Of a stretch of 64,000 bases of DNA, positions 525 to 59,174 are shown one piece after another. The first letter of the stretch is position 1. The number at the start of each line of letters is the position of its first letter. Both the position numbers and the translations under genes were made by a program. The stretch lies in sequence record LR756504.1; one strand, 5' to 3'. The notes under the pieces were generated by a model that was not told the origin of the DNA, did no database searches, and worked only from the letters and a program-made list of their open reading frames with translations.

Positions 525-1220
525 ATGAAAAACGTTTTAAATTTTGAGCAATTTGTAAATGAAAATTGGGATTTTCCTGGATATGGTGTTGCTATGAATG
601 GTAATGGTGTGACACCAAATGACCCGACAACGAGCGTAAATGCTTATGATAAATTTAAAGCTGATGCTGAAAATCAAATTGCACGTCTTAGATTTATTTT
701 ACAAAATGCTTTTGCTGATGCATCTACATTGGATAAATCTAAATTTGATTTTGTTATAGAAAACTTAAAGGTATTTAGAATATTACCTAATAATAATGGA
801 TTTTTAGATATTTACATCAAATTTATATTAAATGAAACTAATTACATGGGATGTTTTAAAGATTGGGGAAGTAAAAATTGTAAATTTGAAAGTGCTGTAC
901 TCGCAGTTCCACAAATAAGAATACATTTAGAAAATAAAATAAAACTTGAAGGAATATTCAAAAAATGTTTAACTGAATGGTTTATTCCTAATAATGGTGA
1001 ATATAAAGCATTAACTAAAATAAAAGTATATGATTTTATGGGTGACATTTTTTATATCCCACAAGATGCAAACATAGTAGTTGATGAAGTTGTAACAGAA
1101 GATGATAAACCAACAATTAATATTTTATACAAAGAAAAAATGTATTATTTGACTAATCTTGACTATTACTTCTTTAATTGGTGGTTTGATACTAAAGAAA
1201 AACCTAAATTTTATATCTAA
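525..1220 (+). CDS. Hypothetical protein with CTS-like N-terminus (MKNVLNFEQFVNE)
   Basis: 231-aa ORF; no catalytic motif recognised. Confidence 0.6.
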   Translation: MKNVLNFEQFVNENWDFPGYGVAMNGNGVTPNDPTTSVNAYDKFKADAENQIARLRFILQNAFADASTLDKSKFDFVIENLKVFRILPNNNGFLDIYIKFILNETNYMGCFKDWGSKNCKFESAVLAVPQIRIHLENKIKLEGIFKKCLTEWFIPNNGEYKALTKIKVYDFMGDIFYIPQDANIVVDEVVTEDDKPTINILYKEKMYYLTNLDYYFFNWWFDTKEKPKFYI

Positions 1221-1459
1221 ATCTTTTTAACTTGTTTTAGATTGGATGGATTAGTTACCCTTGATGGAATAATTTCATTATCATATTCATTTACTGCAAC
1301 TTCTAATTTAGTGATTGCTTCAGAGAAAAACTTATTCGATACATTTATAACATATTTAGATGCTAATATTAATTTGTTAGCTCTATGAATTTTTTCTTTT
1401 AGAGAATCTATTTCTGCTTTTTGTTTTTCGATAAGGTTTATTAAATCTTGCTGATTCAT
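1217..1459 (-). CDS. Hypothetical coiled-coil protein
   Basis: 80-aa ORF downstream of the peptidase, heptad-like N-terminus. Confidence 0.5.
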   Translation of the reverse strand: MNQQDLINLIEKQKAEIDSLKEKIHRANKLILASKYVINVSNKFFSEAITKLEVAVNEYDNEIIPSRVTNPSNLKQVKKI

Positions 1460-1471
1460 ATATTAATGTGT

Positions 1472-2638
1472 TTATATGTCCATATGACCACTACTCCATC
1501 CATTATAAGCATCTTGATCCCATTCCATGTGTGGTGAAGTTGACATTCTCGCTGGGGGTAATAGAAGTGGTGCTTTAGTTATAGTACTAGAAAAAGGGCT
1601 ATTATTTAAATTCCTTTTTTTAGATTGCTTATAATCTTTTTTTTCTTTTCTTGACATTTTATTCCAATTTGGTGGAAAATAAGCAGTTGATATTTTAACA
1701 TTATTATTAAATGTAATAATAGTCTTACTTCCGTCCGCATGGTGAACTATGTCCTCTCTTTTGTCGTTATTTTTCTTTTTAATTTCTACAGGGCGACCTG
1801 CATAAAAATCATCTAAGTCTTTTATTGTATATTTTGAATAACTCGTTGGTTTTTTAGCAAATTCGTGTTTATAAATCTTTGTAGATAAATCATTGATTAT
1901 ATCATATACAAGTCCTACACAACGTTCAACATCATCTAGTCTAATAAATTCTGTTGCAGTATGTGGCATATAATAACCACAAGACATATTGAAACAAGCG
2001 ACATTTAAACCCATTTCTTTTAATTCAACAATATCGGTTTGTCCACCCATTTCAATTTTATAACCCCATTTTTCCAATAAAGGTTTTAAATCATCTTCAA
2101 AATCTTCATTAAATAGCTGAATTCCATGTCCATATTTAATGAAATCATCAGCACCTCTTCTATCACACTGAATTAAGAAAGCAGAATCGTTAAAAAATTC
2201 CATTCTACATGCACTAGAGCCCACACAACCAATTTCTTCTCTAGAAAAGAAAGCCACTTTAATGTTATCTAATTTAGATAACATATCTAAGCAGACATAT
2301 ACACCTACTTTATCATCACCACCAATACCATATTGTTCATTTTTAACAGTATCAAATGCAATTAAATCACCATTTTCGTTAAATCTAACTTCTACATTCA
2401 TATTAACATCATGTACAGTATCAATATGAGATACAACAGTCGGGTAAAAATCGGCTAATCCCTTAGTGACATAAATATTGCCTTCTTCATCATATTCAAT
2501 GAAAATATCAGCCCCCATTTCAATCATTTTAAGTATTTTATCAACGAGGTATTGAACCATCCTTGATTCATCTTTGGAATGTGATTGAATTTTTAAGACT
2601 TCAACTAACTTTTCAACATTTATGTTTTGATATGGCAT
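1472..2638 (-). CDS. M20/M28-like zinc peptidase (copy 1)
   Basis: SHIDTVH, GGDDKVG, REEIGCVGS, DRRG and YYMPHT metal-binding motifs. Confidence 0.8.
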   Translation of the reverse strand: MPYQNINVEKLVEVLKIQSHSKDESRMVQYLVDKILKMIEMGADIFIEYDEEGNIYVTKGLADFYPTVVSHIDTVHDVNMNVEVRFNENGDLIAFDTVKNEQYGIGGDDKVGVYVCLDMLSKLDNIKVAFFSREEIGCVGSSACRMEFFNDSAFLIQCDRRGADDFIKYGHGIQLFNEDFEDDLKPLLEKWGYKIEMGGQTDIVELKEMGLNVACFNMSCGYYMPHTATEFIRLDDVERCVGLVYDIINDLSTKIYKHEFAKKPTSYSKYTIKDLDDFYAGRPVEIKKKNNDKREDIVHHADGSKTIITFNNNVKISTAYFPPNWNKMSRKEKKDYKQSKKRNLNNSPFSSTITKAPLLLPPARMSTSPHMEWDQDAYNGWSSGHMDI

Positions 2639-2654
2639 TTTGAATATTTTAATA

Positions 2655-2685
2655 CAAATATAGTGATTTTTTTTATATTGTCAAA
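2655..2685 (-). promoter_or_regulatory. Bacteroidota-type sigma70 promoter
   Basis: Minus strand TTTG (2685-2682), 19-nt spacer, TATATTTG (2662-2655), just upstream of the peptidase start. Confidence 0.7.
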
Positions 2686-2823
2686 CAAATATTGTTTTAA
2701 AAATGAAAAATTTGAATAAATAGGATTTTATAAAGCATTTCTTCTTTTTTGAATGAATTTTACGGTAAAATTATATAATATAGAGTTATTCTAATTGATG
2801 TAGTTGAATTTATGATATAGTAA

Positions 2824-4377: not shown

Positions 4378-4394
4378 TTAAATATAATATTTTT

Positions 4395-8362: not shown

Positions 8363-9334
8363 TTATAACATAGTTACCTTGAATGATCTAGTTTTAGTAT
8401 AAACTATGTAATTTTTACCAATTACTGCTTTATATTTAAAAAAGTTTAATAGAATACCTTGATATACAAAATTTCCTTGAAAGTCATATATGTTTGCATC
8501 TTCTTGTAGATAATTAGTAGCAACATAAATAATATTAGTATATGTAGTAGCTCCATCATAGTCAACTTGTTTTATTCTATAATAAAGAACTGGTTCAACT
8601 ACATTGTGTTGTGTAAATGTATATTGATTATATTTGATATTTATACCACTAACTTCACCAATATCAGTAAAAACTTTTCCATCAATTGAATTTTCAATTA
8701 CATATTTATCATTATTTACTTCATCCGCAACAGTCCAATTAAGGATAACATCACCATTATTTTCTTTACCTGTAAATGAAATAAATTTAACTGGTAATGA
8801 ACCTACACACGAAACAACACTACCACTTGATGATGTTGGTGCTACTATAATAATGTTATCAATTAAAATATTATAATCTGAATAATTAGTAGCGAATGCA
8901 ATTTTAAATATACCTTGTCCAGTAGAAGTAGGTGTAAATGTAGTTGTGTACAAAGTCCATCCAATATTTGATTTACTTACTGTTGTAGGGTTACTATATG
9001 TACCACTAATATTAGTAGATACTGTTATACTATTGGTGCTTGGTATTGTTTCTATATCATAATAAAATGATATTGTATAGGGTTTACCAATTTCAAAGTA
9101 ATATTTTTGACTAATAATATATTCACCATCTTTAGCCTCAGCGTATTGATATCCTTCTTGTGCTCTCCCATCAGGAGTTTTTCTAACTTGAACATTAGAA
9201 CTACTTGGATCCCAACATGCATCATCTCTTAAATTTCCAGTATATACATTTTCAAAACCATCGACAAATTGTGTTGTTTGACCAATACATAGCGATGTAC
9301 ATAATAATACGAATAGAAATGTTATTTTTTTCAT
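8363..9334 (-). CDS. Secreted protein with CBM-like domain, LPV(K/E)-type Ig-like domain and degenerate T9SS C-terminal domain
   Basis: Signal peptide MKKITFLFVLLCTSLCIG; LPVKFISFTG...VILNWTVADEVNNDKYVIENSIDG...YYRIKQVDYDG; tail ANIYDFQGNFV. Confidence 0.75.
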   Translation of the reverse strand: MKKITFLFVLLCTSLCIGQTTQFVDGFENVYTGNLRDDACWDPSSSNVQVRKTPDGRAQEGYQYAEAKDGEYIISQKYYFEIGKPYTISFYYDIETIPSTNSITVSTNISGTYSNPTTVSKSNIGWTLYTTTFTPTSTGQGIFKIAFATNYSDYNILIDNIIIVAPTSSSGSVVSCVGSLPVKFISFTGKENNGDVILNWTVADEVNNDKYVIENSIDGKVFTDIGEVSGINIKYNQYTFTQHNVVEPVLYYRIKQVDYDGATTYTNIIYVATNYLQEDANIYDFQGNFVYQGILLNFFKYKAVIGKNYIVYTKTRSFKVTML

Positions 9335-9438: not shown

Positions 9439-10998
9439 CTAATTACACACAGGACAATCTCTTTCACCTTGTCCACCACATTCATAACATTCCCTGCTTC
9501 CTTCATTACAATAATTACAATATACTTTACCATCATTACAGTCGGAATTAGTACAATCAATTTTACCTATACCTTCACAGTTGTGGCATGTATTATGACC
9601 ATCTGTACAATATGCACAAGGTTCATATCCAATACCATCACAATCCTCACATTTTTCAATATTAAGCTTCCCAATACCTTTACATGTCTTACATTTAACT
9701 TCAATTTTCTTTTGCTCACCTATGCCATTAATAGTAAGTTGTGGTTCATCGATTAGTATAACACCTTTTCCTTTACAATCCACACATTCATCATAAGTTT
9801 CACCTACACCATTACATGTGTCACATTCAGAACCTCTGCCTGTTCCATCACATTTTTCACAGTCTATTTCACCAGTTCCACTACAATCAGAGCATTCAAT
9901 TTTTTCTGTTCCATCACAATAAGGACAATCTTGGTAACCATCACCATCACACTCATCACATTCATAAGAACCGTTATCACATTCACATGTAATAGTACCA
10001 TCACCCCCACATCTTTCACATTTATTATTAGGGCCGCCGTCAGTTTCGGACCATTTTTGAACATGACTCCTTGTGCTTGAATTGGTTAAATAATAACCAT
10101 CTGCGTCCTCACATAGAAATTTTATAGTATCCATGTATGGTTTTTCTACTTCTATCCAATCAATGCCTTTTGGTAAATTTATATCAAAATTTAGCTGTTT
10201 TACTCCATCTGAAGTATTAAATCTTTGACATGTGTATGATTGCTCAGTTTTATAAACCCATCCTTTTGTTTTAGCGTAATCAACCATCATATGAAGAGTT
10301 TCATCATCAATACTATAAACTCTATCCATAAATGTATATGTTTCTCCTTCGAAATCTTTAATATCTTTCCATATAATAGCTCTCGCCATTAATGTATTAC
10401 TTTTAATATCTATAAGAGCTAATAAATAAACATTAGGTGTTTTTGTATAAACTGTAAAATAATCTTCACACGATTCATATCTCATGCACGAATTATAAAG
10501 AGAAATGCTATCAGTTTTTCCATCTGGCCTAATGTAGTATTTATTTTCATTATACCATTTACTAATAACATCACCATGAAATAATTCAAATTTTGTTTTT
10601 TCTGAATCAGAAAACATTTTGTTGTGTGCTATCTTAAATTTATTAACAAAATCTTCTATTGCTTTATCATTAACGTCTACACCTTTTTTAAGAAGTAATG
10701 CTCTAAGTAAACGTCCAATTTTAGTTGATTGTCTTTTCTTTGATGTCCATTCAGTTTCACCTTCACTTGGTAATGTTTTACCAATATATGATACAAAATC
10801 ATTTTTATCACGTAAAATATCAAGATAGCTATCGCCTAAATCATCTTTTCCTTGATGTGCATCTAATAAAAATTTAGCTAATGGATCATCTATTTTTTCT
10901 AAAAGTTGTATTAAAGAATGGCTTAATACCAATTCTTTTTCAGAAATCATACCATTTAAAAAATTAAGGAATTCAACTAAAATTTTATAGTGATTCAT
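9439..10998 (-). CDS. SCMRY-domain protein with long C-terminal DnaJ-like CxxCxGxG zinc-finger array
   Basis: KIGRLL, SCMRY, RAIIW, FMDRVY; 14 CxxC plus 2 irregular Cys pairs. Start moved from 11130 to 10998 because a terminator lies in the longer N-terminus. Confidence 0.7.
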   Translation of the reverse strand: MNHYKILVEFLNFLNGMISEKELVLSHSLIQLLEKIDDPLAKFLLDAHQGKDDLGDSYLDILRDKNDFVSYIGKTLPSEGETEWTSKKRQSTKIGRLLRALLLKKGVDVNDKAIEDFVNKFKIAHNKMFSDSEKTKFELFHGDVISKWYNENKYYIRPDGKTDSISLYNSCMRYESCEDYFTVYTKTPNVYLLALIDIKSNTLMARAIIWKDIKDFEGETYTFMDRVYSIDDETLHMMVDYAKTKGWVYKTEQSYTCQRFNTSDGVKQLNFDINLPKGIDWIEVEKPYMDTIKFLCEDADGYYLTNSSTRSHVQKWSETDGGPNNKCERCGGDGTITCECDNGSYECDECDGDGYQDCPYCDGTEKIECSDCSGTGEIDCEKCDGTGRGSECDTCNGVGETYDECVDCKGKGVILIDEPQLTINGIGEQKKIEVKCKTCKGIGKLNIEKCEDCDGIGYEPCAYCTDGHNTCHNCEGIGKIDCTNSDCNDGKVYCNYCNEGSRECYECGGQGERDCPVCN

Positions 10999-11050
10999 TT
11001 GAAATAATAATACATTTTGATTATATATATTAATTAATTGATATAAAACA

Positions 11051-11079
11051 AAAAATCCTCTAAAATATAGAGGATTTTT
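11051..11079. terminator. Intrinsic terminator after the 11099 ORF
   Basis: AAAAATCCTCTA-AAATA-TAGAGGATTTTT. Confidence 0.75.
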
Positions 11080-11098
11080 AAAAATAGCTATTAACTTA

Positions 11099-12550
11099 TT
11101 ATCTTCTTCCGACACCTTTACAATATTCACAAGTCATAGTATCACCATCTTCTTTATGATGTCCTACGCCATCACATTCTTCGCAAAAACCACCATGATT
11201 GTATGACCAATTATCATCCCACTTTTGATTTTCATCATTAGTAAGTCTCGGAACTAATTTACCTGTTTCAACATCTTTAAAATATTTAAAAAATTTCAAT
11301 GTATCTAAATAAGGAAATCTAGTATTTTTCCAATCAGACCAATTAATATCATTTATAATAAATGCTTGTAATACAGATTGTTTTACGATAGCACCATTTG
11401 TAATAGGTGTATATGGTTTAGCGTTTTGTGTAGCTTTATACCACCAACCTCTTTTTTCAGCATATAGTTTAAACAATTCATCTAAAGGACCTTCAACACA
11501 ATAGATTCTATCCATAAAAGTAGCTATTTCACCATCAATTAGAATATCATTCCAAATTAATGCTCTACCCATTAATAATCCATTTTCTTTACTTATTAAA
11601 GTAAGAAGAGATATAAAAGGAGTATGTGTATAAACATGAAGATAATCTCCACATTTATCATAACGCATACAAGATTTATTTAGTGTGTCACCACCATCAA
11701 TGGGTTGGTGATATGAATTACCATTATACCATTTGATAATTTCTTCACCTTTTGTCATTTTCCAATCAGCAAATTCTAATTGCTCAGAATCGTCTACTTT
11801 TTGAATCGATCTGTATTTAGCAACGAAGGTATCTATCTCAGGCTGTGTGAATTGAACACCCCTTTCGTTGGCTACAGCAGTAACTAATCTACTAATTTTA
11901 GTTTTTTGTCTACTTGGATGTCTCCATACATCTCTTTCATTACCAATATCTTTTTTCTTTATTGGTAGATATGAAATAAATCCTTCTTCTGATGCAGTAT
12001 CAATATAACTAAAATCAATATTTAATACTTCTGAACTATTATGTAAATCTAAAAGAAATCTTGAAATAGTACCACCCATTCTTTTCAATTTATGTGATAG
12101 ACTTTTACCTAAAACAATTTCTTTTTGCTCCATTATAGAAAATAAGAATCCTCTTAATTGATCCATATCAGTTATAATAGAAGCTGGTGTTTTTTTAGAA
12201 GAAGTGGATTTTTTATCAGAAGAAGCAACTTCTGAATACCTATTCTTTATTACTTTTTTAGGAGTAAATGTAGCACCACCTATACCCCAATCATTTATAT
12301 TAATTGGTTGTTCTAAAAATTGTCGTTGCCTTTCAATATGTTCAGCAATCACTCTTTGTCTATCACCCTCATTATCACCCTCATTGTTATTTACATCAGG
12401 AATAGGAATACCCTCAGTAAAAAGCAACCAAACACCACCATTTTGATGTTCTTCTGCACCCACTTCCATATCTCTTCCTTTTTTTTGGGACACCCTTTTT
12501 TTATTTAAATAATCTTGGAAAGATCCTCTTTCGTTATCACCAGTTGGCAT
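11099..12550 (-). CDS. SCMRY-domain protein (paralog of 9439 ORF) with one terminal CxxCxGxG pair
   Basis: KISRLV, SCMRY, RALIW, FMDRIY, PYLDTLK; likely start MPTGDNERG at 12550 (track gives 12637). Confidence 0.7.
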   Translation of the reverse strand: MPTGDNERGSFQDYLNKKRVSQKKGRDMEVGAEEHQNGGVWLLFTEGIPIPDVNNNEGDNEGDRQRVIAEHIERQRQFLEQPININDWGIGGATFTPKKVIKNRYSEVASSDKKSTSSKKTPASIITDMDQLRGFLFSIMEQKEIVLGKSLSHKLKRMGGTISRFLLDLHNSSEVLNIDFSYIDTASEEGFISYLPIKKKDIGNERDVWRHPSRQKTKISRLVTAVANERGVQFTQPEIDTFVAKYRSIQKVDDSEQLEFADWKMTKGEEIIKWYNGNSYHQPIDGGDTLNKSCMRYDKCGDYLHVYTHTPFISLLTLISKENGLLMGRALIWNDILIDGEIATFMDRIYCVEGPLDELFKLYAEKRGWWYKATQNAKPYTPITNGAIVKQSVLQAFIINDINWSDWKNTRFPYLDTLKFFKYFKDVETGKLVPRLTNDENQKWDDNWSYNHGGFCEECDGVGHHKEDGDTMTCEYCKGVGRR

Positions 12551-12638
12551 ATTTTTCTTTTTAATTGCTTTTTTAATCAATTTAATGTAAAAAATAATAA
12601 TTTTCTTACATTTTTTTATAAATTTGAAAATTTTCATC

Positions 12639-14324: not shown

Positions 14325-14391
14325 ATATTGGCATTTTTCAAAATAATATCTATATACGAATATAATATATACTAAAAAGTATTAAAGTTTA

Positions 14392-14646
14392 ATGCAAAAT
14401 AGAGTTTTATCTTTTTCTGATTATACAAAAGAAAGCACTTATAAAATGGGTGCTAATGGTATGGAATTACAGGAATGGTCATATTACAAAGATCATTATC
14501 CAGAAAAATATGATATGCCCAAAGAGGAGCAATTTGTATGGATTATTAAACATAAAGAAAAGAAGATGATAATAGTTAACAGTACTATATCAGAAGACAA
14601 AGTTAAAACTATTTTAGAAGAAATGAAAAAAGCAACGCTTTTATAA
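14392..14646 (+). CDS. Hypothetical protein with CTS-like N-terminus
   Basis: 84-aa ORF, MQNRVLSFSDYTKES. Confidence 0.5.
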   Translation: MQNRVLSFSDYTKESTYKMGANGMELQEWSYYKDHYPEKYDMPKEEQFVWIIKHKEKKMIIVNSTISEDKVKTILEEMKKATLL

Positions 14647-15155
14647 TGAATATCTTCAATTTTGATAAATGGAATGATTTAAATGAGGAACGAATAACTC
14701 CCATTGGTATAGAGAAATTCAACGAATTACTTATTAAATATGCTCATTCTAATCAAAATGCTTTTTTATACAAAAAGATAATTAATCCTAAAACTAAAGT
14801 TGGTATTTTTTTTAAAACTACTAAACAATTTGAAAATCATGTTAATGAGCTTAAAACAGGAGAAAAACAAGAATGGAATGGATTTCCATTAAGAGATATG
14901 AGTTTAGTTTGCTATAATTACATTGAAAAAGAAGAAGGTGAAACATTCATGGTATTTCCTTTTAAATCGTCTCTATTTACAATATCTTCAAAAAAAGAGT
15001 GGGACACAGATGTAAATAGTGAAAATTGTAATAAAGGATATTGGACAGATAAAATCAAATGGTTAGAAAACTTAGATCAAAGGGAATTATGGACTGAATC
15101 ACCATGTTTAATAATTTCCAAAAAGATGTGGGATTCATTAAATAAAAAATCTTAA
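14646..15155 (+). CDS. Hypothetical protein with CTS-like N-terminus
   Basis: 169-aa ORF, MNIFNFDKWNDLNEE; TAATG coupling. Confidence 0.55.
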   Translation: MNIFNFDKWNDLNEERITPIGIEKFNELLIKYAHSNQNAFLYKKIINPKTKVGIFFKTTKQFENHVNELKTGEKQEWNGFPLRDMSLVCYNYIEKEEGETFMVFPFKSSLFTISSKKEWDTDVNSENCNKGYWTDKIKWLENLDQRELWTESPCLIISKKMWDSLNKKS

Positions 15156-15171
15156 TTTTTATATATACATT

Positions 15172-15894
15172 ATGAAATTTTTAAAGGATTATAAATTATT
15201 TGAAAGTTATAATGAGGTTAAATCATTATTGATTAATCCTACAAGTAATATGAGAAGCAATTATAATAATATAATTAAAGCTATTAATGCGGTTTGTACA
15301 GGATTTGGATTAAATACGGGTAAAGAATTACTAAAAGAGATCGCTATGGTTGAAACAAGACTCGGTACATTACCTGGTTCTATAAGAACTACAGGTAGAG
15401 GTGGTAGAGGTCCATGGCAAATTGATGAAATTGCATATAGAGATATTATTTCAAGAGGAAAAAAAGAATTCAAAGTATTTTTCAATAAATTTAAAATTTA
15501 TACAGGTATAGACTTATCACAAGTGCAATGGAATGAATGTAATCAATTTTTAATAGGATGTGCATTTGCAAGATTGATAATGCAAGAAAGAGGTATTAGT
15601 GATAATATTAAAGATAGAGCGGATAGAGCACTTGCTTGGAAAAAGTATTATAATACTGTTGCAGGAAAAGGAACACCACAAAAATACTGGGAAATAGTTT
15701 CAGATTGTAATAAAGCATTAGCAATAAATGATCCATTAGCGGGTAAAACGTATAATGATTATATAGAAGAAAAAGATCAAATTTTAGCAGCACCTGATAC
15801 AGAATCAATTATTCAATCACCACTTTATAAACAAAATGATGCATCAGAAATTGATTCTACTTATGTTGCGAAAAAGCCATATATTAGTAAATGA
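15172..15894 (+). CDS. Lysozyme-like/transglycosylase-fold protein (copy 1)
   Basis: AMVETRLG, GPWQID, WKKYYNTVAGKGT; paralog of 31645 ORF. Confidence 0.6.
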   Translation: MKFLKDYKLFESYNEVKSLLINPTSNMRSNYNNIIKAINAVCTGFGLNTGKELLKEIAMVETRLGTLPGSIRTTGRGGRGPWQIDEIAYRDIISRGKKEFKVFFNKFKIYTGIDLSQVQWNECNQFLIGCAFARLIMQERGISDNIKDRADRALAWKKYYNTVAGKGTPQKYWEIVSDCNKALAINDPLAGKTYNDYIEEKDQILAAPDTESIIQSPLYKQNDASEIDSTYVAKKPYISK

Positions 15895-17525: not shown

Positions 17526-17587
17526 AATATTTACTATTATTATAAGAAAGTTATTCTAGTTTTAATATATACTTTAAAATATTTTTT

Positions 17588-17830
17588 ATGGCTAAAATTG
17601 TAAATAAATATTCAGATTATATGAAATCCTTAAATAAGGACTATGATTGGGATCCTATACCAACTAGGGATATATCACATCAAAAATGGAATCCAAATGC
17701 AGACATTAGAGAAATTGGAATAGGTGATGCTGATCCAGTGTTAAAATTTAAAGATTGGATTGGTCAATATTGGTTAAAAAAACAAGATGTTTCTAAAATC
17801 AGAAGAAAGAATAAGAATAAGAAAAAATAA
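17588..17830 (+). CDS. Hypothetical protein, basic C-tail
   Basis: 80-aa ORF; AATATATAC upstream. Confidence 0.5.
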   Translation: MAKIVNKYSDYMKSLNKDYDWDPIPTRDISHQKWNPNADIREIGIGDADPVLKFKDWIGQYWLKKQDVSKIRRKNKNKKK

Positions 17831-21654: not shown

Positions 21655-21942
21655 TTCAGATTCATCCGTTCCATCATCTTCAATTTCTTCCTCTGACATT
21701 TGAATTAGATATAAAGTTAATTCTTGAAATATTTCATTCATCTGTGTATAATCGAACCATGTTGTACTATTTTCAAGAATTTCTAAAAATTCAACAAATG
21801 TATCTGTATCTGGCTGAAAATGAATAAATGCTTTATCATAGTCTAATCCTCTTTGATTAACGTATTGACAGAAGATAGAGTAAAAATCTTCTTCTTGTTC
21901 GGATGGTAATCCTTTATATTCTTCCCACTCGCTATAGTTCAC
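21646..21942 (-). CDS. Acidic hypothetical protein
   Basis: 98-aa ORF. Confidence 0.5.
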   Translation of the reverse strand: MNYSEWEEYKGLPSEQEEDFYSIFCQYVNQRGLDYDKAFIHFQPDTDTFVEFLEILENSTTWFDYTQMNEIFQELTLYLIQMSEEEIEDDGTDESELE

Positions 21943-23005
21943 TTTCTTTATTCTCTTTAATTTTACACTTTATATTTAAAAGACTTGGTGCTAAATGCTT
22001 TAAAGCGATAAGAATTTTTATATCATTACCATCAACTACTAATTCAACTATAAAATCTTTATTTTCATTAACTAAGAATCTTTCTTTAATATTAGTACTT
22101 GATTTTTCGATCCATTCTGATTTAGATGGAATATTAATTATATTCATTTTAGAATCAAATCTGAAATAAGATTCATCTGATATTGCATGATATTTCAATA
22201 AAATATTATGTACATCATCATATCTTTCATCATGTTCTTTAACAAGAGGGTATAATACATCTTTATTAAGAATATCATTCTTTATATTTAGATATTGAGA
22301 TTTGAATGTGCTGAAATCATTGAATGCATCAGGGGTTTTAGATAAATCAACATTCAAGTCATAAAAAGAACTGTAATATAATTTAGGTAAAGCTTCTATT
22401 TTAATTCCCAATCCTTTCATTTTAAAATTTCTATAAGTTTCCCAAGTTATTTCACCAATAATGTCTAAGAAATTAATATAATGCTTTAAAAATTCATCTT
22501 TCAAATTAGCTTTTACTAATTCTACCCATTTAGTAATTAATACATCCCAATTATCATGTGTATAAATTCTTCTAGCTGTAAATCCTAAGAATTTCTCTAT
22601 ATCAGTAAGTGATACTTTATCATCTACATTTTTGTTTCTTATTACATTATTATCAATTATTATACCACCATTATTTAAAATTTTAATAGATGATATATCT
22701 GCGAATTTTTCTTTTATTTTTAAAGATGCTTCAAAACATTTCTTTAACTTAGCCCAATCAGATTCAATATTTATACCTTTGATATTAATTAAATGTTGCT
22801 TTTCAATTTTTATTTCAGGAGTTTTTTTAATTTCAATTATAAGTCCTTGCCAAAATGAATTATCAGTTAAAAAGAAACGATTTTTCATAGAATTTAAAAA
22901 ATCAAAATACTCAGGTTTAAATACAGCTAATGCAGTTATAACCGAATAAATTAAAGGGAATTCACTTTTTCCTTCAGTTAAATATTCATTATATTTCTTA
23001 ACCAT
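21932..23005 (-). CDS. Hypothetical protein with CTS-like N-terminus (MVKKYNEYLTEG)
   Basis: 357-aa ORF. Confidence 0.6.
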   Translation of the reverse strand: MVKKYNEYLTEGKSEFPLIYSVITALAVFKPEYFDFLNSMKNRFFLTDNSFWQGLIIEIKKTPEIKIEKQHLINIKGINIESDWAKLKKCFEASLKIKEKFADISSIKILNNGGIIIDNNVIRNKNVDDKVSLTDIEKFLGFTARRIYTHDNWDVLITKWVELVKANLKDEFLKHYINFLDIIGEITWETYRNFKMKGLGIKIEALPKLYYSSFYDLNVDLSKTPDAFNDFSTFKSQYLNIKNDILNKDVLYPLVKEHDERYDDVHNILLKYHAISDESYFRFDSKMNIINIPSKSEWIEKSSTNIKERFLVNENKDFIVELVVDGNDIKILIALKHLAPSLLNIKCKIKENKESEL

Positions 23006-23082
23006 TTAGAGCATTGTTTTTGTTATATATTAATTTTTACAGTTGTATTGATAGTTTGAATAGAAAAAATAATATATAGAAT

Positions 23083-23715
23083 ATGAAATATTTGAAAAGA
23101 TTTAAGTTGTTTGAGAAATCATTGGAAGAAGCGGTAGAAGAATTAAAAGACTTTCAAAAGGAATTAGACATTAACTCAAATCTTACTAAGCTCATAAAAT
23201 CTATAGATGGCATCGAATTAGAACTTAGTACGATATTCGAACATTTATTAGGCGATGAAGATATTACGGAATTAGAAGATGATCCTAAATTTAATAATGA
23301 ATTATCCGATAGAAATTTAAAAATTAGTGAATTATTTGATACAGAGGAATCAGCCACTTTAATAAAGCTAAGACTTAAATACTATTGGATTTATACAACA
23401 GATTCAACAGAATTGGATACACCTGTTTATATTCTACTACAATGGGTAAATAAAGACAACACACTATCAAATATAAGACTTTTTTACGTACAGAAAGATA
23501 TAACAAATTTCTATGATGAATTATCAACTGTTAAAATGATAGTGAAACAAAAAGATAAAAAAAGCAATAAATGGATTTACATTAGTAGTAATTCTGGACA
23601 AAATTGGGTATTACAAAATGCCGAAAATGCTACAACAACTTTTAAACAGACTTTAAATGCTGAAGATGTTGAAGAGCTATCAAAACACCCCGATGTTATA
23701 GTAGTTTTTGAATAA
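23083..23715 (+). CDS. Hypothetical protein with CTS-like N-terminus (MKYLKRFKLFE)
   Basis: 210-aa ORF; AATATATAG 4 nt upstream. Confidence 0.6.
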   Translation: MKYLKRFKLFEKSLEEAVEELKDFQKELDINSNLTKLIKSIDGIELELSTIFEHLLGDEDITELEDDPKFNNELSDRNLKISELFDTEESATLIKLRLKYYWIYTTDSTELDTPVYILLQWVNKDNTLSNIRLFYVQKDITNFYDELSTVKMIVKQKDKKSNKWIYISSNSGQNWVLQNAENATTTFKQTLNAEDVEELSKHPDVIVVFE

Positions 23716-28002: not shown

Positions 28003-28067
28003 AATTTATTTTTAATATTTAAAGTAATTAGTCCATAAGGATTAATTAAAAATTATTGAAATTAAAT

Positions 28068-28979: not shown

Positions 28980-28987
28980 AAATAAAT

Positions 28988-29182
28988 ATGAGTAAAGAAC
29001 AAATTGAAAGTGGAATGGAGTATATAGAATCTCCAGAAGAATTAAATTTAAATTTTGATTTAATTGATTTTGAGGAAATAGAAAGTGTTTCTATTGAAGA
29101 AGTTGAAAATGTAAAAGTATATGATTTAGAAATAAAAAATAATCATACGTATCAAGTTGATGGGCTAGGATTAGTTCATAAC
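28988..29182 (+). mobile_element. Split intein, C-half (65 aa)
   Basis: Own ATG; block F VYDLEIKNNHTY, block G LVHN; followed by GGG. Confidence 0.88.
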
Positions 29183-31606: not shown

Positions 31607-31644
31607 TAAATAGAAGAATAAATCTTCAAAATTATATATACATC

Positions 31645-32256
31645 ATGAAACACATTAAACCGATATACGAATTTTTTAACAGAAAACCTGAATATTGTAT
31701 AGAAATTACAACAGCTAATATTAAGGATAATTTAAAAAATATTGCAAATGCTGTAGTTAAAGCATTAGATTATCTAAGCGATAAAGAGATTGGTGGTAAA
31801 GAATTTCTTAAAGAAATAGCAATGACTGAAACTAAACTTGGAACTGATCCTAATACTAATAGAACAACTGGTAATGCAGGGCGTGGAGTATGGCAAATAG
31901 ACGAAATTGGGTTTGATGCGACAAAAGATGTAGATTCTCATCCAATTTTAAAGAAATATCACGAAAATTTAAAAAGAAATGGAATTGATTGGGATGATGT
32001 TGAATGGGATGATTGTAATAAGCTTATTTATGGGGCTATAGCAGCTCGACTTTTAATAGCAGTAAAACCATTCAAGATAAATGAAAATCGTGCTTATAGA
32101 GCATATCAATGGAAGAAATACTACAATACCAATGATGGTAAAGGTACAGCCGATGATTATTGGGATAGGGTGAGAGAATGTTATAAAAAGTGTGGATTTT
32201 CTGATAAATATGCCAATATAACTTTAGCTCAATACTTGAAAAGTATTAAAAATTAG
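31645..32256 (+). CDS. Lysozyme-like/transglycosylase-fold protein (copy 2)
   Basis: AMTETKLG, GVWQID, WKKYYNTNDGKGT. Confidence 0.6.
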   Translation: MKHIKPIYEFFNRKPEYCIEITTANIKDNLKNIANAVVKALDYLSDKEIGGKEFLKEIAMTETKLGTDPNTNRTTGNAGRGVWQIDEIGFDATKDVDSHPILKKYHENLKRNGIDWDDVEWDDCNKLIYGAIAARLLIAVKPFKINENRAYRAYQWKKYYNTNDGKGTADDYWDRVRECYKKCGFSDKYANITLAQYLKSIKN

Positions 32257-40170: not shown

Positions 40171-40596
40171 TTATTTATTTTTATATGCTACAGCTTGGTT
40201 AATCCATACTGTATATCCCATAGCATTATGGTATCCATTTTCATCTTTTCGACTAGTGCTTTTATTAGTAATTAAAGGAACTTTATACATCACATCATTT
40301 AAATTGAATATGATATATATTCTATCAATATTAACTATATTTAAGTTGTCTTTATTCTCAATTAAAGTGTTAATTATGTATGTTCTATAAGTATCATCTG
40401 TAGATGTACCAAATGTAAACTCTACTTGTGATGATATTGTAGCAACATTTTTAATTTCACTTATTAAAAATTCTTTAATTTTAGGAAGAAGAAATCTTTT
40501 AATTTTTGAAATATGTCTTTTTAATACTGTATCATCAAAAGCTTGAATGTTGAATTCAAGCGATTCATTAACAGATAAAGATTTAATAAATTTCAT
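40171..40596 (-). CDS. Hypothetical protein with CTS-like N-terminus (MKFIKSLSVNES)
   Basis: 141-aa ORF. Confidence 0.55.
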   Translation of the reverse strand: MKFIKSLSVNESLEFNIQAFDDTVLKRHISKIKRFLLPKIKEFLISEIKNVATISSQVEFTFGTSTDDTYRTYIINTLIENKDNLNIVNIDRIYIIFNLNDVMYKVPLITNKSTSRKDENGYHNAMGYTVWINQAVAYKNK

Positions 40597-40615: not shown

Positions 40616-41071
40616 TTAACTTCTTTTAACTACCATATTATTTTCAAACACAACTGTTTTGCTATGTGTACGTAAAAACCATCTACCTTTTACTCTCATT
40701 ACTTTATATCCTTGTGGAATATATTCATTTATTCTTGCTAATGTAACATTTGTCTCATAACCACCATTATCCAATTTAAAATCACCTGATGGATAGAATG
40801 TTACGATATTAGTTTGGTGTAAACGAATGGCTATTGCACCATCATCCAATCTTACTGCATAAGTATTATTAGCTATCTTTTTTCTTTCATTGGATTTACC
40901 TTGTAATAAATCATCAAATTTAGCATAATCTTCACCAATATCTTCATCTTCTTCATTTTCATCATCGGATTCTTCATCCTCACTATCATCATCTACGAAA
41001 CTCTCAGCCGTAAATTTCAAATTTTTATTATATTCAGAATTAGTAAATTCTTCAAACTTTTTAATACTCAT
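40616..41071 (-). CDS. Phage protein with CTS-like N-terminus, acidic linker and LHQTNIV...GGYETNVTLARIN domain
   Basis: 151-aa ORF, MSIKKFEEFTNSE. Confidence 0.6.
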   Translation of the reverse strand: MSIKKFEEFTNSEYNKNLKFTAESFVDDDSEDEESDDENEEDEDIGEDYAKFDDLLQGKSNERKKIANNTYAVRLDDGAIAIRLHQTNIVTFYPSGDFKLDNGGYETNVTLARINEYIPQGYKVMRVKGRWFLRTHSKTVVFENNMVVKRS

Positions 41072-41164
41072 ATAAATATCTTCATATTTTACTTATATAT
41101 TAAAAAATTTATCGTTTTTTAAAACTTTCAATTTTTATTTTTCTATAATCGACAAATTAAACAC

Positions 41165-41704
41165 ATGAAAGTCTTAAAAGACATTACCAACTTCTTTATT
41201 TTGAAAGATTATCAAGATAAAATTCGAATGACCGCAAAAGATTTCGGATACATACTATTATTTAAAATATGTATAGCTTACATTTCTGTAATAATAGGAA
41301 ATTTGCTATTAACATATGTCTTTAAATTGAAAGTAGATAGTATACATTCTAAAATTGCTATTGGTGAATTATATTACTTAGGAGTTATTTTAGCTCCTAT
41401 ATTAGAAGAACTTTTTTTTAGATTACCACTACTTTTAATAAGTATGGTACTTAAAAATTTTAAAATGTTAGTGATGATTTCATATGTTTGTATATCTGTG
41501 TTTTTTGGATTAATTCATATTACTAATTATAACAACTTTTCAAACTATTCAGCTTTAGAAATGTTAGTTATAACATTTCCTCAAATATTAGGAGGTTTTG
41601 TATTAGGTTGGGTGTGTTTAAAATATAAATTTGGATTATTATGGAGCATTCTTTTACACGCATCATTTAATTTTATAGGAGTTTCACTTTCAGCATTATT
41701 ATAA
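41165..41704 (+). CDS. CPBP (CAAX/Abi) intramembrane metalloprotease
   Basis: PILEELFFR, FFGLIH, LHASFN; multiple TM segments. Confidence 0.85.
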   Translation: MKVLKDITNFFILKDYQDKIRMTAKDFGYILLFKICIAYISVIIGNLLLTYVFKLKVDSIHSKIAIGELYYLGVILAPILEELFFRLPLLLISMVLKNFKMLVMISYVCISVFFGLIHITNYNNFSNYSALEMLVITFPQILGGFVLGWVCLKYKFGLLWSILLHASFNFIGVSLSALL

Positions 41705-44996: not shown

Positions 44997-45566
44997 TTAA
45001 TATATATCGTCAGTTAACGAGTCCTTTTCATCATCTTTAAATCTCTTTACATCAGACGTTTTTGATGGAACTTTTAATACAGCAGCTTTTATTTCTTTTA
45101 TAGTCTTGATTAAGAAGTCTTCATTCATTTTATCAATAGGAATAACAATTTCCTTTTGTTTAATTATATATTCTCTATCGTAATCATAAACATCAACAGT
45201 TAATAAAAGCTTTTCAACTTGTTTTAATCTACCCTGTATTTCATGTTCTAAAAATTTAATCTTCCACATATACTCTTTATCGACATCCTCTGCCCAAATA
45301 CACAATCCTCTTCTTTCTTTAGTAATATCTCTATTTTTAGCTAATAAAATATTGCTGATTTCTCCATATTTGAACCAATATATTAAATGTCCTCTCAATT
45401 CTTCTAAAAATTCTTTAAGTACAACCGCAGAATTTCTATCTTGAATTTCTGGTTCTTGATTAACATCTTGATTATCAGATTGTAATGCTTCTGGTGCGGG
45501 TGCTATAGCAGATTCATCAGCTTCCTTTATTAAATTATACTTCTTAAATTTTACAATATATTTCAT
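44997..45566 (-). CDS. Hypothetical protein with CTS-like N-terminus (MKYIVKFKKYNLIKEA)
   Basis: 189-aa ORF; AATATATAC upstream. Confidence 0.6.
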   Translation of the reverse strand: MKYIVKFKKYNLIKEADESAIAPAPEALQSDNQDVNQEPEIQDRNSAVVLKEFLEELRGHLIYWFKYGEISNILLAKNRDITKERRGLCIWAEDVDKEYMWKIKFLEHEIQGRLKQVEKLLLTVDVYDYDREYIIKQKEIVIPIDKMNEDFLIKTIKEIKAAVLKVPSKTSDVKRFKDDEKDSLTDDIY

Positions 45567-45661
45567 TTTTGAGGAAATCTTTAGTGTATATATTAAATTT
45601 TGTGGATTTATTTTCTTTTTTGGAATTTTTTTATTATATTTGATATGTATAATTTGTTAAT

Positions 45662-57676: not shown

Positions 57677-57677
57677 T

Positions 57678-57737
57678 ATGAAAATTTTAAAAGAAAAAGA
57701 ATCTTCTGCTGGTATTAATCCAAATGAATTAGAATAA
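57678..57737 (+). CDS. 19-aa mini-ORF MKILKEKESSAGINPNELE duplicating part of the 57763 ORF
   Basis: ATG 1 nt after the peptidase stop; carries the inverted-repeat copy in frame. Confidence 0.4.
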   Translation: MKILKEKESSAGINPNELE

Positions 57738-57927
57738 AAAAAAGGGCTTAAAGCCCTTTTTTTTATTCATCAAAATCTCTTGCCCTACTCAATACACCAT
57801 CAATAGACTTTGCTAAATCTACGGGTATTTGATGTCCTCTACAGCGTTCTAATAAATGTCTCATATCAGAAGCAACACCTAGTAATTCTATTAATTCATT
57901 TGGATTAATACCAGCAGAAGATTCTTT
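57696..57927. repeat. Perfect 36-bp inverted repeat (57696-57731 / 57892-57927)
   Basis: AAAGAATCTTCTGCTGGTATTAATCCAAATGAATTA on + strand and its exact reverse complement 160 bp downstream. Confidence 0.95.
57736..57764. terminator. Bidirectional intrinsic terminator
   Basis: AAAAAAAAGGGCT-TAA-AGCCCTTTTTTTT. Confidence 0.85.
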
Positions 57928-57990
57928 AAGTTCTTTATGAAGTCTTGCATTTTCTAACTTTAAATATTCTAACTCATAATTTTTATCCAT
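57763..57990 (-). CDS. Hypothetical 75-aa protein
   Basis: Coiled-coil N-terminus; contains KESSAGINPNEL. Confidence 0.55.
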   Translation of the reverse strand: MDKNYELEYLKLENARLHKELKESSAGINPNELIELLGVASDMRHLLERCRGHQIPVDLAKSIDGVLSRARDFDE

Positions 57991-58008
57991 GTGTGTTTAA
58001 TAAATTTT

Positions 58009-58560
58009 TTACAATAATATAAAAAAAAGTACTATGGCTAATGTAACAACATTAGTACCAATTAGAGTTTTTACTGTACCATTTTTTCTTTTTATCTTTC
58101 CTTCTTGTTTTTGAATAATTTCATCTTTTTTTGTACTTATTTCTTCGTATTTAGCAATAGTTTTTTTATCATTTGATAAAATCTGTTCATCATTCTTTAT
58201 AATTTCATTAGCTTTAGCATTTTCTAATATTAAAGAATCGGTAATATTTTTACATTGTTTATCTTTTTCTTCCATTATTATAATTTTTGTGCTAAGTGCA
58301 TCAACTTTTTCCGCATCAATCAAACCTTTTTCAAGACATTTTGCTATTTCTTTAGCTTTACCAGTTTCCCAAATCCAATAAGTTTTACCTGTTATAGAAT
58401 CTTTAACTACTTTATCTGGTGTAATATCTTCAACGATTGGTGTTTGTGTGTCTTGGACAATATTATTTGTTGTGTTTTCTACGCTGTTCGTAGTCTGCGA
58501 AAAACTGATGTAGCTGCTTGTCATTAAAATTAGTAATATTATCAATTTTTTCATATTCAT
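58009..58560 (-). CDS. Secreted/anchored coiled-coil protein (signal peptide plus C-terminal TM)
   Basis: MKKLIILLILMTSSYISFSQ; TLIGTNVVTLAIVLFFILL. Confidence 0.6.
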   Translation of the reverse strand: MNMKKLIILLILMTSSYISFSQTTNSVENTTNNIVQDTQTPIVEDITPDKVVKDSITGKTYWIWETGKAKEIAKCLEKGLIDAEKVDALSTKIIIMEEKDKQCKNITDSLILENAKANEIIKNDEQILSNDKKTIAKYEEISTKKDEIIQKQEGKIKRKNGTVKTLIGTNVVTLAIVLFFILL

Positions 58561-58873
58561 TATTTATTTTTTCTAAAATATCATTTTGCTTTTTAATTTC
58601 TTCATTGAGACTATCCATTTTTTGTTGCATTATTGGAATTCTTTTTTCTATAGCTTCTTTATCTCTTTTAAGGATTTGATTTTGTCCTTCAAATTTATTA
58701 TTAGCATCTTTTAATACTTGAATTTCAGTTTCTTTTTTATTAATATACTTATATCCCTTTTTAAGAAAACCATTAATTGGTAATGATGGAACTAAACATG
58801 TTAGAAACACACCAAAAAAGAAACATACCATATATTTCCAATACTTCTTTATAAAATTTGTTAAAAATAACAT
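58463..58873 (-). CDS. N-anchored coiled-coil membrane protein (i-spanin-like architecture)
   Basis: YMVCFFFGVFLTCLVPSL then long coiled coil; overlaps downstream ORF by 98 nt. Confidence 0.5.
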   Translation of the reverse strand: MLFLTNFIKKYWKYMVCFFFGVFLTCLVPSLPINGFLKKGYKYINKKETEIQVLKDANNKFEGQNQILKRDKEAIEKRIPIMQQKMDSLNEEIKKQNDILEKINNEYEKIDNITNFNDKQLHQFFADYEQRRKHNK

Positions 58874-58874
58874 A

Positions 58875-59174
58875 TTATTTCTTTAAATTTTCCTTTATAT
58901 AGTTAACTTCATCATCTACCCAAGAATTATTTCCTGAATATAAAGTGGATTTAAGTTTATCTAATAAAGTAAGCTTTTCTTTTAAATATGTTTCTAACAT
59001 AAGATTTTTGATGCTATTTACAAATTCAACATTAGATTTAATAATAATATTTTTGCTTGCGGCTTGTGGATCATTATCAACTATAATATCCAATGATTCT
59101 ATCAATTTATCTATTTTCTCTTCAAATGATAGAGAATCGTGTGTTGATTCATTAATTTGACTAAATTTTTTCAT
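58875..59174 (-). CDS. Hypothetical protein with CTS-like N-terminus (MKKFSQINES)
   Basis: 99-aa ORF; AATATATATAAC upstream. Confidence 0.6.
   Translation of the reverse strand: MKKFSQINESTHDSLSFEEKIDKLIESLDIIVDNDPQAASKNIIIKSNVEFVNSIKNLMLETYLKEKLTLLDKLKSTLYSGNNSWVDDEVNYIKENLKK

What the first reader, a model, noticed from the sequence alone, without database searches (positions are those of the whole stretch)
525..59174. T4 capsid-targeting-sequence-like N-terminus on about 12 unrelated proteins
Seen: N-termini MKNVLNFEQFVNE (525), MQNRVLSFSDYTKES (14392), MNIFNFDKWNDLNEE (14646), MKFLKDYKLFES (15172), MVKKYNEYLTEG (23005-), MKYLKRFKLFEKS (23083), MKHIKPIYEFFN (31645), MKFIKSLSVNES (40596-), MSIKKFEEFTNSE (41071-), MKYIVKFKKYNLIKEA (45566-), MKKFSQINES (59174-), more weakly 17588 and 10998-. 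The bodies are unrelated. Known: T4 internal proteins carry a ~10-aa N-terminal capsid-targeting sequence of the form MKT(Y/F)xEF...E that the gp21 prohead protease removes after Glu. Inference: a large, scattered set of head-packaged proteins, possibly injected into the host.
Basis: partly seen in the sequence, partly recalled or inferred. Interest (0 to 1): 0.68.

Follow-up and report, generated by a model that had tools for sequence, protein, structure and literature searches.

The report
Capsid-targeting-like tags in a huge phage
Dozens of otherwise unrelated proteins of one of the largest known phages (636 kb) begin with the same short peptide, which looks and is positioned like the phage T4 tag that loads proteins into the capsid and is cut off after a glutamate. 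If that reading holds, these giant phages may carry a large cargo of proteins into the cell.

Summary
A matrix trained on the held 348-kb contig found 28 strong N-termini among 584 ORFs, none at 91,382 internal positions, and 1-2 in shuffles. It then found about 20 more in 288 kb of the same genome that it had not seen. The window is part of LR756504.1, a 636-kb uncultured 'Mahaphage'.

The consensus is M-K-[YH]-[LI]-K-x-[FY]-x-x-[FY], often followed by [LIV]-[NK]-E-[SNAG]. About 60-85 of 923 ORFs carry it. Only two window genes fit the strict form. About eight fit looser forms, one is weak and one is wrong.

Evidence for a T4-like capsid-targeting propeptide:
- The core aromatic-x-x-aromatic-[LIV]-x-Glu also fits the T4 tag and the T4 capsid cleavage site.
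- The last residue is Glu rather than Asp (25:5 here, 52:3 in a relative).
- The genome has a T4-type capsid protein, portal and protease-scaffold, and the scaffold carries 11 repeats of the same pattern.
- Tagged genes share a promoter-like motif with the structural genes.
- Codon usage shows selection on the peptide, not the DNA.

Relatives carry 13-57 tags each, and the cultured relative PTm1 carries none. Packaging, cleavage and injection are untested.

The parts
15172..15894 (+). Tagged gene, strict form (tag = first 12 codons, 15172-15207, ending L-F-E|S). The body is lysozyme-like.
   Evidence: Matrix score 16.6 bits. The tag is conserved in homologs 44-85% identical and absent from distant ones. 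AF2 model pLDDT 72.7; the top 30 VIA-align hits are almost all muramidases or lytic transglycosylases, Z 4-6.2, aligned from residue ~25 onward. ATATATA lies at 15161-15167, 4 nt before the ATG.
23083..23715 (+). Tagged gene, strict form (tag 23083-23121, MKYLKRFKLFE|KS). The body is an orphan.
   Evidence: 22.2 bits. ATATATA at 23072-23078, 4 nt before the ATG. No confident Pfam or PHROG family and no Atlas lead.
525..1220 (+). Tagged gene, core-heptad form (tag 525-563, F-E-Q-F-V-N-E|N).
   Evidence: One of the 25 N-terminal matches to aromatic-x-x-aromatic-[LIV]-x-E, where 2.6 are expected. No family found.
21932..23005 (-). Tagged gene, core-heptad form (tag 22970-23005, Y-N-E-Y-L-T-E|G).
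   Evidence: Close to the tag form of the 735-kb relative. ATATATA at 23024-23030, 18 nt upstream.
31645..32256 (+). Tagged gene (prefix MKHIK, I-Y-E at residues 7-9). Paralog of 15172 with a lysozyme-like body.
   Evidence: ATATATA at 31634-31640, 4 nt before the ATG.
44997..45566 (-). Tagged gene (tag 45519-45566: prefix MKYIVKF, then L-I-K-E|A), followed by an acidic linker.
   Evidence: ATATATA at 45587-45593, 20 nt upstream.
40616..41071 (-). Tagged gene of the MSIKKF sub-form, then a long acidic linker, then a Kyano_Gp96-like domain (residues 66-146).
   Evidence: ATATATA at 41094-41100.
40171..40596 (-). Probable tagged gene (MKFIK prefix, V-N-E|S at residues 9-12). It lacks the two aromatic residues. 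It lies just downstream of 40616-41071 on the same strand.
   Evidence: Below my thresholds (3.2 bits).
58875..59174 (-). Probable short tag (MKKFSQ-I-N-E|S).
   Evidence: A near-identical N-terminus occurs in the 735-kb relative. ATATATA at 59196-59204.
14392..15155 (+). Two adjacent genes (14392-14646 and 14646-15155) with looser tags: F-S-D-Y-T-K-E|S, and F-D-K-W then L-N-E|E.
   Evidence: ATATATA at 14365-14371 upstream of the first gene. Both are below the matrix threshold.
17588..17830 (+). Weak candidate (Y-S-D-Y with no Glu site). A paralog elsewhere in the genome carries a strict tag.
   Evidence: ATATATA at 17565-17571.
9439..10998 (-). Not part of the system: a tail-fibre-like paralog whose N-terminus is the conserved start of its own family.
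   Evidence: BLAST family of six large proteins next to a baseplate wedge gene.

Best explanation
The peptide is an N-terminal address tag and propeptide of the T4 capsid-targeting-sequence type.

Proposed mechanism:
- Late in infection, tagged proteins are made together with the head proteins.
- The two aromatic positions of the tag bind the scaffolding core, which is the C-terminal repeat region of the protease-scaffold protein. The proteins are thereby enclosed in the prohead.
- The gp21/gp175-family prohead protease then cuts after the glutamate of [LIV]-x-E. This frees the cargo inside the head, from where it may be ejected with the DNA.

Shown here: the motif, its restriction to N-termini, its Glu specificity, selection at the peptide level, the T4-type head genes, the scaffold repeats, the shared promoter-like motif, and conservation in relatives.

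Inferred: binding to the scaffold, cleavage, packaging and injection.
For: 1. Restricted to N-termini and far above chance.

2. Bodies are unrelated, apart from a few paralog pairs. In the 15172 family the tag lies outside the folded domain and is missing from distant homologs.

3. T4 sequences read from AF158101: the IPII/IPIII tag contains Y-Q-E-F-I-A-E|A, and the gp23 maturation site is F-G-S-F-L-T-E|A. Both fit aromatic-x-x-aromatic-[LIV]-x-E. In this phage that pattern occurs at 25 N-termini against 2.6 expected, and in the 735-kb relative at 52. PMC9026906 reports that T4 tag residues 4 and 7 carry targeting, residues 8 and 10 carry processing, and gp21 cuts after L/I-x-E. These are the positions conserved here.

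4. Tags defined by residues 1-7 alone have [LIVF]-x-E with the Glu at residues 8-18 in 79% of cases (77% in a relative). Other N-termini show 25% (p = 5e-10).

5. The heptad ends in Glu rather than Asp: 25:5 and 52:3, against a background near 1:1. In T4, Asp blocks processing.

6. Head module: capsid protein in Pfam Gp23 (8e-26); portal in Portal_T4 (2e-65); protease-scaffold matching phrog_207 (2e-32), Peptidase_S80 (23.6 bits) and S77 (22.4 bits).

7. The scaffold part has 11 tandem repeats Y-S-E-Y-[LIV]-A-E. They are conserved in six related genomes.

8. The capsid protein and the protease have conserved [IVM]-x-E-[NSA] sites near their N-termini.

9. ATATATA lies within 28 nt upstream of 44 of 68 tagged genes against 116 of 855 others (p = 7e-20). 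The same motif precedes the capsid, portal, sheath and baseplate wedge genes. The replication genes of the window lack it.

10. Synonymous codon usage inside the tag equals genome usage.
Against: - No virion proteome, N-terminal sequencing or transcript data exist. Only the source DNA run was found.
- The family is very large: 7-9% of ORFs here, and 13% of ORFs in the ~1 Mb flanking the IMG/VR matches.
- It includes ordinary-looking enzymes: FMN-reductase-like, HD-domain, HAD/PNK-like and an alpha/beta hydrolase.
- The commonest sub-form here (MKYLKLFEDF followed by an acidic run) often has no [LIV]-x-E beyond Glu8. Glu8 is kept whatever stands at P3, so it may not be a cleavage site.
- A matrix trained strictly on the scaffold repeats does not pick out the tags: 1/3/9 N-terminal hits in the top 20/50/100, against 1.3/3.3/6.5 expected. 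The likeness to the scaffold exists only at the residue-class level, and the repeats count as one evolutionary event.
- DNA polymerase and one helicase also have an upstream ATATATA, so 'late promoter' is an inference.
Confidence: 0.58

Rival explanations
1. The tag is an expression device. In this view a nascent-peptide or 5'-coding 'ramp' favours translation of mRNAs that start at or near the AUG, in a host phylum that does not use Shine-Dalgarno sites. It would have nothing to do with the capsid.
For: 21 of 68 tagged genes have the promoter-like ATATATA only 3-6 nt before the ATG, so their mRNAs would be nearly leaderless. Only 38 of 855 other genes do (p = 5e-11). The tag is built wholly from A/T-rich codons.
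Against: - As many tagged genes (23) have 14-28 nt leaders.
- The most highly expressed genes with the same promoter motif (capsid, sheath, portal) lack the tag.
- Synonymous codons vary as in the rest of the genome, so the constraint is on the peptide.
- A strict Glu-over-Asp preference 10-13 residues in is not expected of a ramp.
Confidence: 0.12
2. The tag addresses proteins to something other than the prohead. Candidates are a degron for the phage-encoded AAA+ protease/unfoldase, a docking helix for another phage assembly, or a membrane-associating amphipathic helix.
For: The phage encodes a 648-aa two-AAA+ 'ATP-dependent protease' homolog (phrog_4871, 3e-207). The tag is a short amphipathic segment. 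The cargo includes peptidoglycan-directed proteins that could equally be lysis proteins.
Against: - It does not explain the match to the T4 tag and the T4 capsid cleavage site, or the Glu specificity typical of gp21/gp175 proteases.
- It does not explain why the tags have so far been seen together with scaffolds carrying the same heptad pattern.
- The tag has no hydrophobic core: only 4 of 86 tagged proteins have any TM-like segment.
Confidence: 0.17
3. There is no function. The similarity would come from A/T-rich composition plus the usual Met-Lys start, or from a DNA cassette (promoter plus first codons) copied around by recombination.
For: GC content is 26%. MK- starts are common in all ORFs. 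Many tags sit right behind a conserved promoter-like motif.
Against: - Shuffles that keep the composition, or the column make-up, of the N-termini give 1-2 hits against 28.
- There are no internal hits.
- Held-out sequence validates the matrix.
- The reversed DNA pattern gives 0-1 hits per genome against 13-57.
- Synonymous sites are not conserved, so a copied DNA cassette is unlikely.
- The tag persists between genomes whose capsid proteins are only 48-52% identical.
Confidence: 0.03

Closest known systems
Capsid targeting sequence (CTS) of phage T4 internal proteins IPI, IPII, IPIII
   Same: An N-terminal peptide of 10-13 residues on unrelated cargo. Two aromatic residues three apart are followed by an aliphatic residue, any residue and Glu, then a small residue. 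The genome pairs it with a gp21-family protease, a scaffolding core, a Gp23-family capsid protein and a T4-type portal.
   Different: - The prefix is different and longer (M-K-Y-L-K-x before the core). The T4 tags score below zero with the matrix built here.
- 60-85 carriers per genome, against a handful in T4.
- The scaffold is fused to the protease and is made of 14-residue repeats.
- The cargo tends to be acidic rather than basic, often behind an acidic linker.
- Function is untested.
Propeptides of head, inner-body and ejection proteins of giant phages phiKZ, 201phi2-1 and SPN3US
   Same: Many (about 20) head proteins are processed after Glu by a diverged gp21 homolog (Peptidase S80 family) in very large capsids. 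The protease here just passes the S80 threshold.
   Different: In those phages the site is S/A/G-x-E and no common N-terminal address sequence has been described. Here P3 is L/I/V/F and a common tag exists.
Cargo-loading peptides of encapsulins
   Same: A short conserved peptide on unrelated cargo directs it into an HK97-fold shell (my own knowledge, not tested here).
   Different: Encapsulin peptides are usually C-terminal, bind the shell itself and are not cleaved.

Membership tests
T4-type capsid targeting sequence | Located at the extreme N-terminus, starting at Met1 | tested here: met
   28 N-terminal hits against 0 of 91,382 internal positions.
T4-type capsid targeting sequence | Carried by proteins whose mature parts are unrelated | tested here: met
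   All-against-all BLAST of the bodies finds only three small paralog groups.
T4-type capsid targeting sequence | Aromatic residues at the two targeting positions (T4 residues 4 and 7), followed by an L/I-x-E processing site | tested here: met
   The pattern is shared with T4 IPII/III and the gp23 site. It occurs at 25 N-termini against 2.6 expected. 79% of prefix-defined tags have [LIVF]-x-E. Glu outnumbers Asp 25:5 and 52:3. About a fifth of the tags lack a clear site.
T4-type capsid targeting sequence | Sequence similarity to the T4 tag itself | tested here: not met
   T4 IPI-III score 0.3 bits or less with the matrix built here. The likeness is one of residue classes and needs a three-residue shift.
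T4-type capsid targeting sequence | The genome encodes a gp21-family Glu-specific prohead protease and a scaffolding core | tested here: met
   phrog_207 2e-32; Peptidase_S80 23.6 bits (cut-off 23.4); S77 22.4 bits (below the cut-off of 27). It lies next to a Gp23-family capsid gene and carries a C-terminal repeat region. Its specificity is inferred, not measured.
T4-type capsid targeting sequence | The tag binds the scaffold core, and the cargo is found in proheads and virions | not testable with these tools
No proteome exists for this uncultured phage.
T4-type capsid targeting sequence | The tag is removed by the protease during head maturation | not testable with these tools
   Only the sequence motif could be examined.
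T4-type capsid targeting sequence | Expressed together with the head proteins (late) | tested here: inconclusive
   An upstream ATATATA is shared with the capsid, portal and sheath genes and enriched 12-fold at tagged genes. No RNA data were found, and two replication genes also have the motif.
phiKZ-type head propeptides | Cleavage motif S/A/G-x-E | tested here: not met
   P3 at the candidate sites is L, I, V or F.
Sec, Tat or lipoprotein signal peptides | A hydrophobic core of about 10 or more residues after a basic N-region | tested here: not met
   The tag alternates charged and aromatic residues. True lipoprotein-like signals in the window (for example 8363-9334) look different.

The most novel reading that the evidence does not exclude
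The largest known phages use one modular address tag to load 60 or more different proteins into the prohead. The cargo would include muralytic enzymes and many orphans, held there by a tag that imitates the cleavable repeat of the protease-scaffold fusion. The protease would then release all of them at once, giving an injected protein arsenal an order of magnitude more diverse than T4's. The tag would make the arsenal readable directly from sequence in hundreds of metagenomic phage contigs.
Probability: 0.4. Interest if true: 0.85.

Novelty: new variant of a known kind. Interest (0 to 1): 0.66.

Why it matters
If the tag is a capsid address, it predicts from sequence alone which proteins huge uncultured phages carry into the cell. 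These proteins are the first to meet host defences, and here most of them are orphans. It would also explain part of what these phages do with their extra coding capacity and capsid volume.

Three further consequences follow:
- It links the T4 targeting rule to a distant clade.
- It suggests how a cargo tag can evolve by imitating a scaffold cleavage site.
- It offers a natural, portable tag for loading foreign proteins into very large capsids.

The prediction therefore reaches well beyond this genome. None of the papers checked connects capsid targeting with huge phages.

Tried and rejected
- **Strict scaffold mimicry.** A matrix trained on the scaffold repeats does not enrich N-termini. Only the residue-class pattern is shared.
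- **Cultured relatives.** PTm1, pT24, MA9V-1, MaF61 and PAU have no match to the tag DNA pattern. PTm1 has no shared N-terminal family at all, and its scaffold has different repeats. No published virion proteome could therefore be used.
- **Lak-B5.** No match to the prefix DNA pattern. It was not examined further, because it uses another genetic code.
- **Core-only DNA pattern.** Too unspecific: 29 matches against 12 for the control.
- **Function of the cargo.** Pfam and PHROGs gave little. The PDB sequence search gave nothing. Foldseek gave nothing significant. The ESM Atlas gave no usable lead.
- **RNA evidence.** Only the source DNA run holds the sequence.
- **False positives of my loose rules.** SbcC-like, a DegT aminotransferase, the CPBP protease at window 41165, and members of the tail-fibre-like family.


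Full report
**What the window is**

The window has 26% GC and is densely coding under the standard bacterial code. It is 100% identical to LR756504.1, an unannotated 636,363-bp 'uncultured phage'. That record is one of the four largest curated genomes of Al-Shayeb et al. 2020, in the Mahaphage clade with a predicted Bacteroidetes host (PMC7162821).

The genome held for the window is a 347,857-bp IMG/VR contig. It is only part of that circle, bounded by a 123-bp inverted repeat. I fetched the missing 288 kb and rebuilt the record, which gives 923 ORFs. Window coordinate + 410,060 = record coordinate.

The window itself mostly encodes replication and nucleotide-metabolism genes. These are a DnaB-like helicase, both ribonucleotide reductase subunits, a second helicase and a type II topoisomerase. 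The tagged genes are scattered among them.

The quoted N-termini are all present.

- Starting from 13 seeds, an iterated 12-column matrix converged on 28 N-termini at 14 bits or more among 584 ORFs. There is a gap down to 6.9 bits.
- No internal position among 91,382 reached 14 bits.
- Within-protein and column-wise shuffles of the N-termini gave 1.1 and 1.7 hits at 8 bits or more.
- The matrix is self-trained, so the real test is the 288 kb it never saw. There it found about 20 further clear members.
- An unsupervised count found 152 pairs of N-termini sharing at least 7 of 13 residues, against 5-11 in controls.

The consensus is M-K-[YH]-[LI]-K-x-[FY]-x-x-[FY]. It is followed by one of three things:

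- [LIV]-[NK]-E-[SNAG];
- L-F-E-[SK] overlapping the second aromatic residue;
- an acidic run.

Three overlapping definitions give 33, 25 and 68 members, with a union of 86. Identified false positives bring the likely total to about 60-85. They are an SbcC-like protein, a DegT aminotransferase, a CPBP protease and tail-fibre-like paralogs.

In the window, only 15172 and 23083 are strict members. The looser forms are 525, 23005-, 45566-, 41071-, 31645, 40596-, 59174-, 14392 and 14646. 17588 is weak. 10998- is the start of a different family.

The bodies are unrelated by BLAST, apart from a few pairs such as 15172/31645.

**Peptide or nucleic acid?**

Synonymous codon choice at tag positions equals or exceeds genome-wide diversity. 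For example AAA:AAG is 71:29 in the tag against 85:15 genome-wide. The tag-coding DNA in relatives uses all synonymous forms. Selection therefore acts on the peptide.

**Comparison with T4, using sequences read from AF158101**

- IPII and IPIII begin M-K-T-Y-Q-E-F-I-A-E|A.
- The gp23 maturation site is F-G-S-F-L-T-E|A.
- gp22 begins M-L-K-E-Q-L-I-A-E-A.

The first two fit aromatic-x-x-aromatic-[LIV]-x-E. According to PMC9026906, T4 tag residues 4 and 7 carry targeting and residues 8 and 10 carry processing. Asp at position 10 blocks processing, and gp21 cuts after L/I-x-E.

In this phage the same heptad occurs at 25 N-termini against 2.6 expected. In the 735-kb relative LR756501 it occurs at 52 N-termini. 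There the prefix is shorter (M-[IV]-K-[KN]-), which brings the whole tag to within one residue of the length of the T4 tag.

I also defined tags by residues 1-7 only, so that downstream residues are unbiased. Of these, 79% have [LIVF]-x-E with the Glu at residues 8-18, and 77% do in relative LR745206. Other N-termini show 25% and internal windows 24% (p = 5e-10).

The heptad ends in Glu rather than Asp 25:5 here and 52:3 in LR756501, although the two residues are equally common overall. The next residue is usually S, A, N or G.

**Head machinery**

Outside the held contig lie three head genes:

- a T4-type portal (Portal_T4, 2e-65);
- a 764-aa protease-scaffold (phrog_207 2e-32; Peptidase_S80 23.6 bits, just over its cut-off; S77 22.4 bits, under its cut-off);
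- next to it, a Gp23-family capsid protein (8e-26).

The protease ORF probably starts at an internal Met, and a V-N-E-S follows 15-18 residues later. The capsid protein has a conserved [IM]-x-E-N about 42 residues in, in five genomes.

The C-terminal half of the protease ORF holds 11 tandem 14-residue repeats Y-S-E-Y-[LIV]-A-E-x-L-D-K. This makes it by far the richest internal carrier of the heptad (11 copies; the next protein has 3). The repeats recur in LR745206, LR756502, LR756501, LR756500 and two 482-483-kb IMG/VR genomes.

A strict matrix built from these repeats does not pick out the tags. The likeness is therefore one of residue classes, and the repeats count as a single event.

**Regulation**

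ATATATA (extended form TTTAATATATA) lies within 30 nt upstream of a same-strand ORF start for 178 of its 477 occurrences. There are two spacing classes: 3-6 nt (59 genes) and 14-28 nt (101 genes).

The second class includes the capsid, portal, sheath and baseplate wedge genes and the giant structural-looking proteins. Of the 68 rule-defined tagged genes, 44 have the motif, against 116 of 855 others (odds ratio 11.7, p = 7e-20). The window's replication genes lack it.

I read this as co-expression with the virion genes. The timing is not shown, and DNA polymerase and one helicase also carry the motif.

**Cargo**

Most tagged proteins have no family.

The 15172/31645 pair folds with pLDDT 72.7. 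Its best structural neighbours are almost all lysozyme-like enzymes, such as phiKZ gp144, MltE, FlgJ and endolysins. The Z-scores are 4-6.2, individually modest. The alignments start at about residue 25, so the tag is an appendage. Close homologs keep the tag and distant ones lack it.

Other tagged proteins carry a peptidoglycan-binding domain, an FMN-reductase domain, an HD domain, a HAD/PNK-like domain or a Kyano_Gp96-like domain. Residues 14-40 are on average acidic.

**Distribution**

| Genome | Matches to the tag-coding DNA pattern |
|---|---|
| LR756504.1 (this phage) | 33 |
| LR745206 | 53 |
| LR756502 | 57 |
| LR756500 | 13 |
| LR756501 (735 kb) | 0 |
| Lak-B5 | 0 |
| Five cultured relatives | 0 |
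| Reversed-pattern control | 0-1 per genome |

LR756501 has its own prefix variant. PTm1 has no N-terminal family, and its scaffold lacks the repeats.

Their flanks, about 1 Mb in all, hold 284 tags among 2,151 ORFs.

**Verdict**

The best explanation is a T4-like capsid-targeting and cleavage tag used on an unusually large scale (confidence about 0.58). The rivals are less well supported: a translation device, another address or degron, and chance or a DNA cassette.

The weak points are:

- the absence of any proteomic or transcript evidence;
- the size and enzymatic content of the family;
- the sub-form without a clear cleavage site;

None of the papers checked connects capsid targeting with huge phages. 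I file it as a new variant of a known kind.

Noticed in passing
whole window; genome contig ends (LR756504.1 89771-89893 and 378400-378522): The held 348-kb IMG/VR contig is labelled as having inverted terminal repeats and 100% completeness. It is in fact 55% of the circular 636-kb genome, cut at a 123-bp inverted repeat, and it lacks all the head genes.
   Followed up: yes
window 15161-15167, 23072-23078, 31634-31640 (4 nt before the ATG); 14365-14371, 17565-17571, 23024-23030, 41094-41100, 45587-45593, 59196-59204 (16-23 nt before): A promoter-like motif TTTAATATATA occurs in two spacing classes. The close class would give nearly leaderless mRNAs. The motif also precedes the capsid, portal, sheath and baseplate wedge genes, and it is conserved upstream of tagged genes in relative LR745206.
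   Followed up: partly
window 26785-31079: The large subunit of ribonucleotide reductase is split. 26785-28002 carries the ATP-cone, the N-domain, the start of the barrel and a Hint (intein) domain. 29547-31079 carries the rest of the barrel. Two small ORFs (28056-28979 and 28988-29200) lie between them.
   Followed up: no
window 9439-12637 and LR756504.1 480998-486796, 530888-533059: A family of at least six proteins of 500-770 aa shares a ~300-residue N-terminal domain and lies next to a baseplate wedge gene, so it is probably tail-fibre-like. Two members outside the window (record positions 299414 and 480998) carry the MKY[LI]K prefix in front of the family N-terminus.
   Followed up: partly
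window 41165-41704: A multi-pass membrane protein with motifs typical of CPBP/Abi intramembrane proteases. Its N-terminus resembles the tag only superficially.
   Followed up: no
window 8363-9334, 58009-58560, 61329-61715: Proteins with lipoprotein or secretion-type signal peptides that end in a ...C-x-G-Q or S-Q-T-T style, as in Bacteroidota. This fits the predicted host phylum.
   Followed up: no
LR756504.1 187410-189248 (L035 9410-11248) and 163745-165586, 192855-194807: Large HNH/homing-endonuclease-like genes (phrog_3339/559) sit inside the head module, one of them between the protease and portal genes.
   Followed up: no
LR756504.1 534497-536443 (held contig 156098-158044): The phage encodes a 648-aa protein with two AAA+ modules that matches 'ATP-dependent protease' (phrog_4871, 3e-207). 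This makes a degron reading of the tag conceivable.
   Followed up: no
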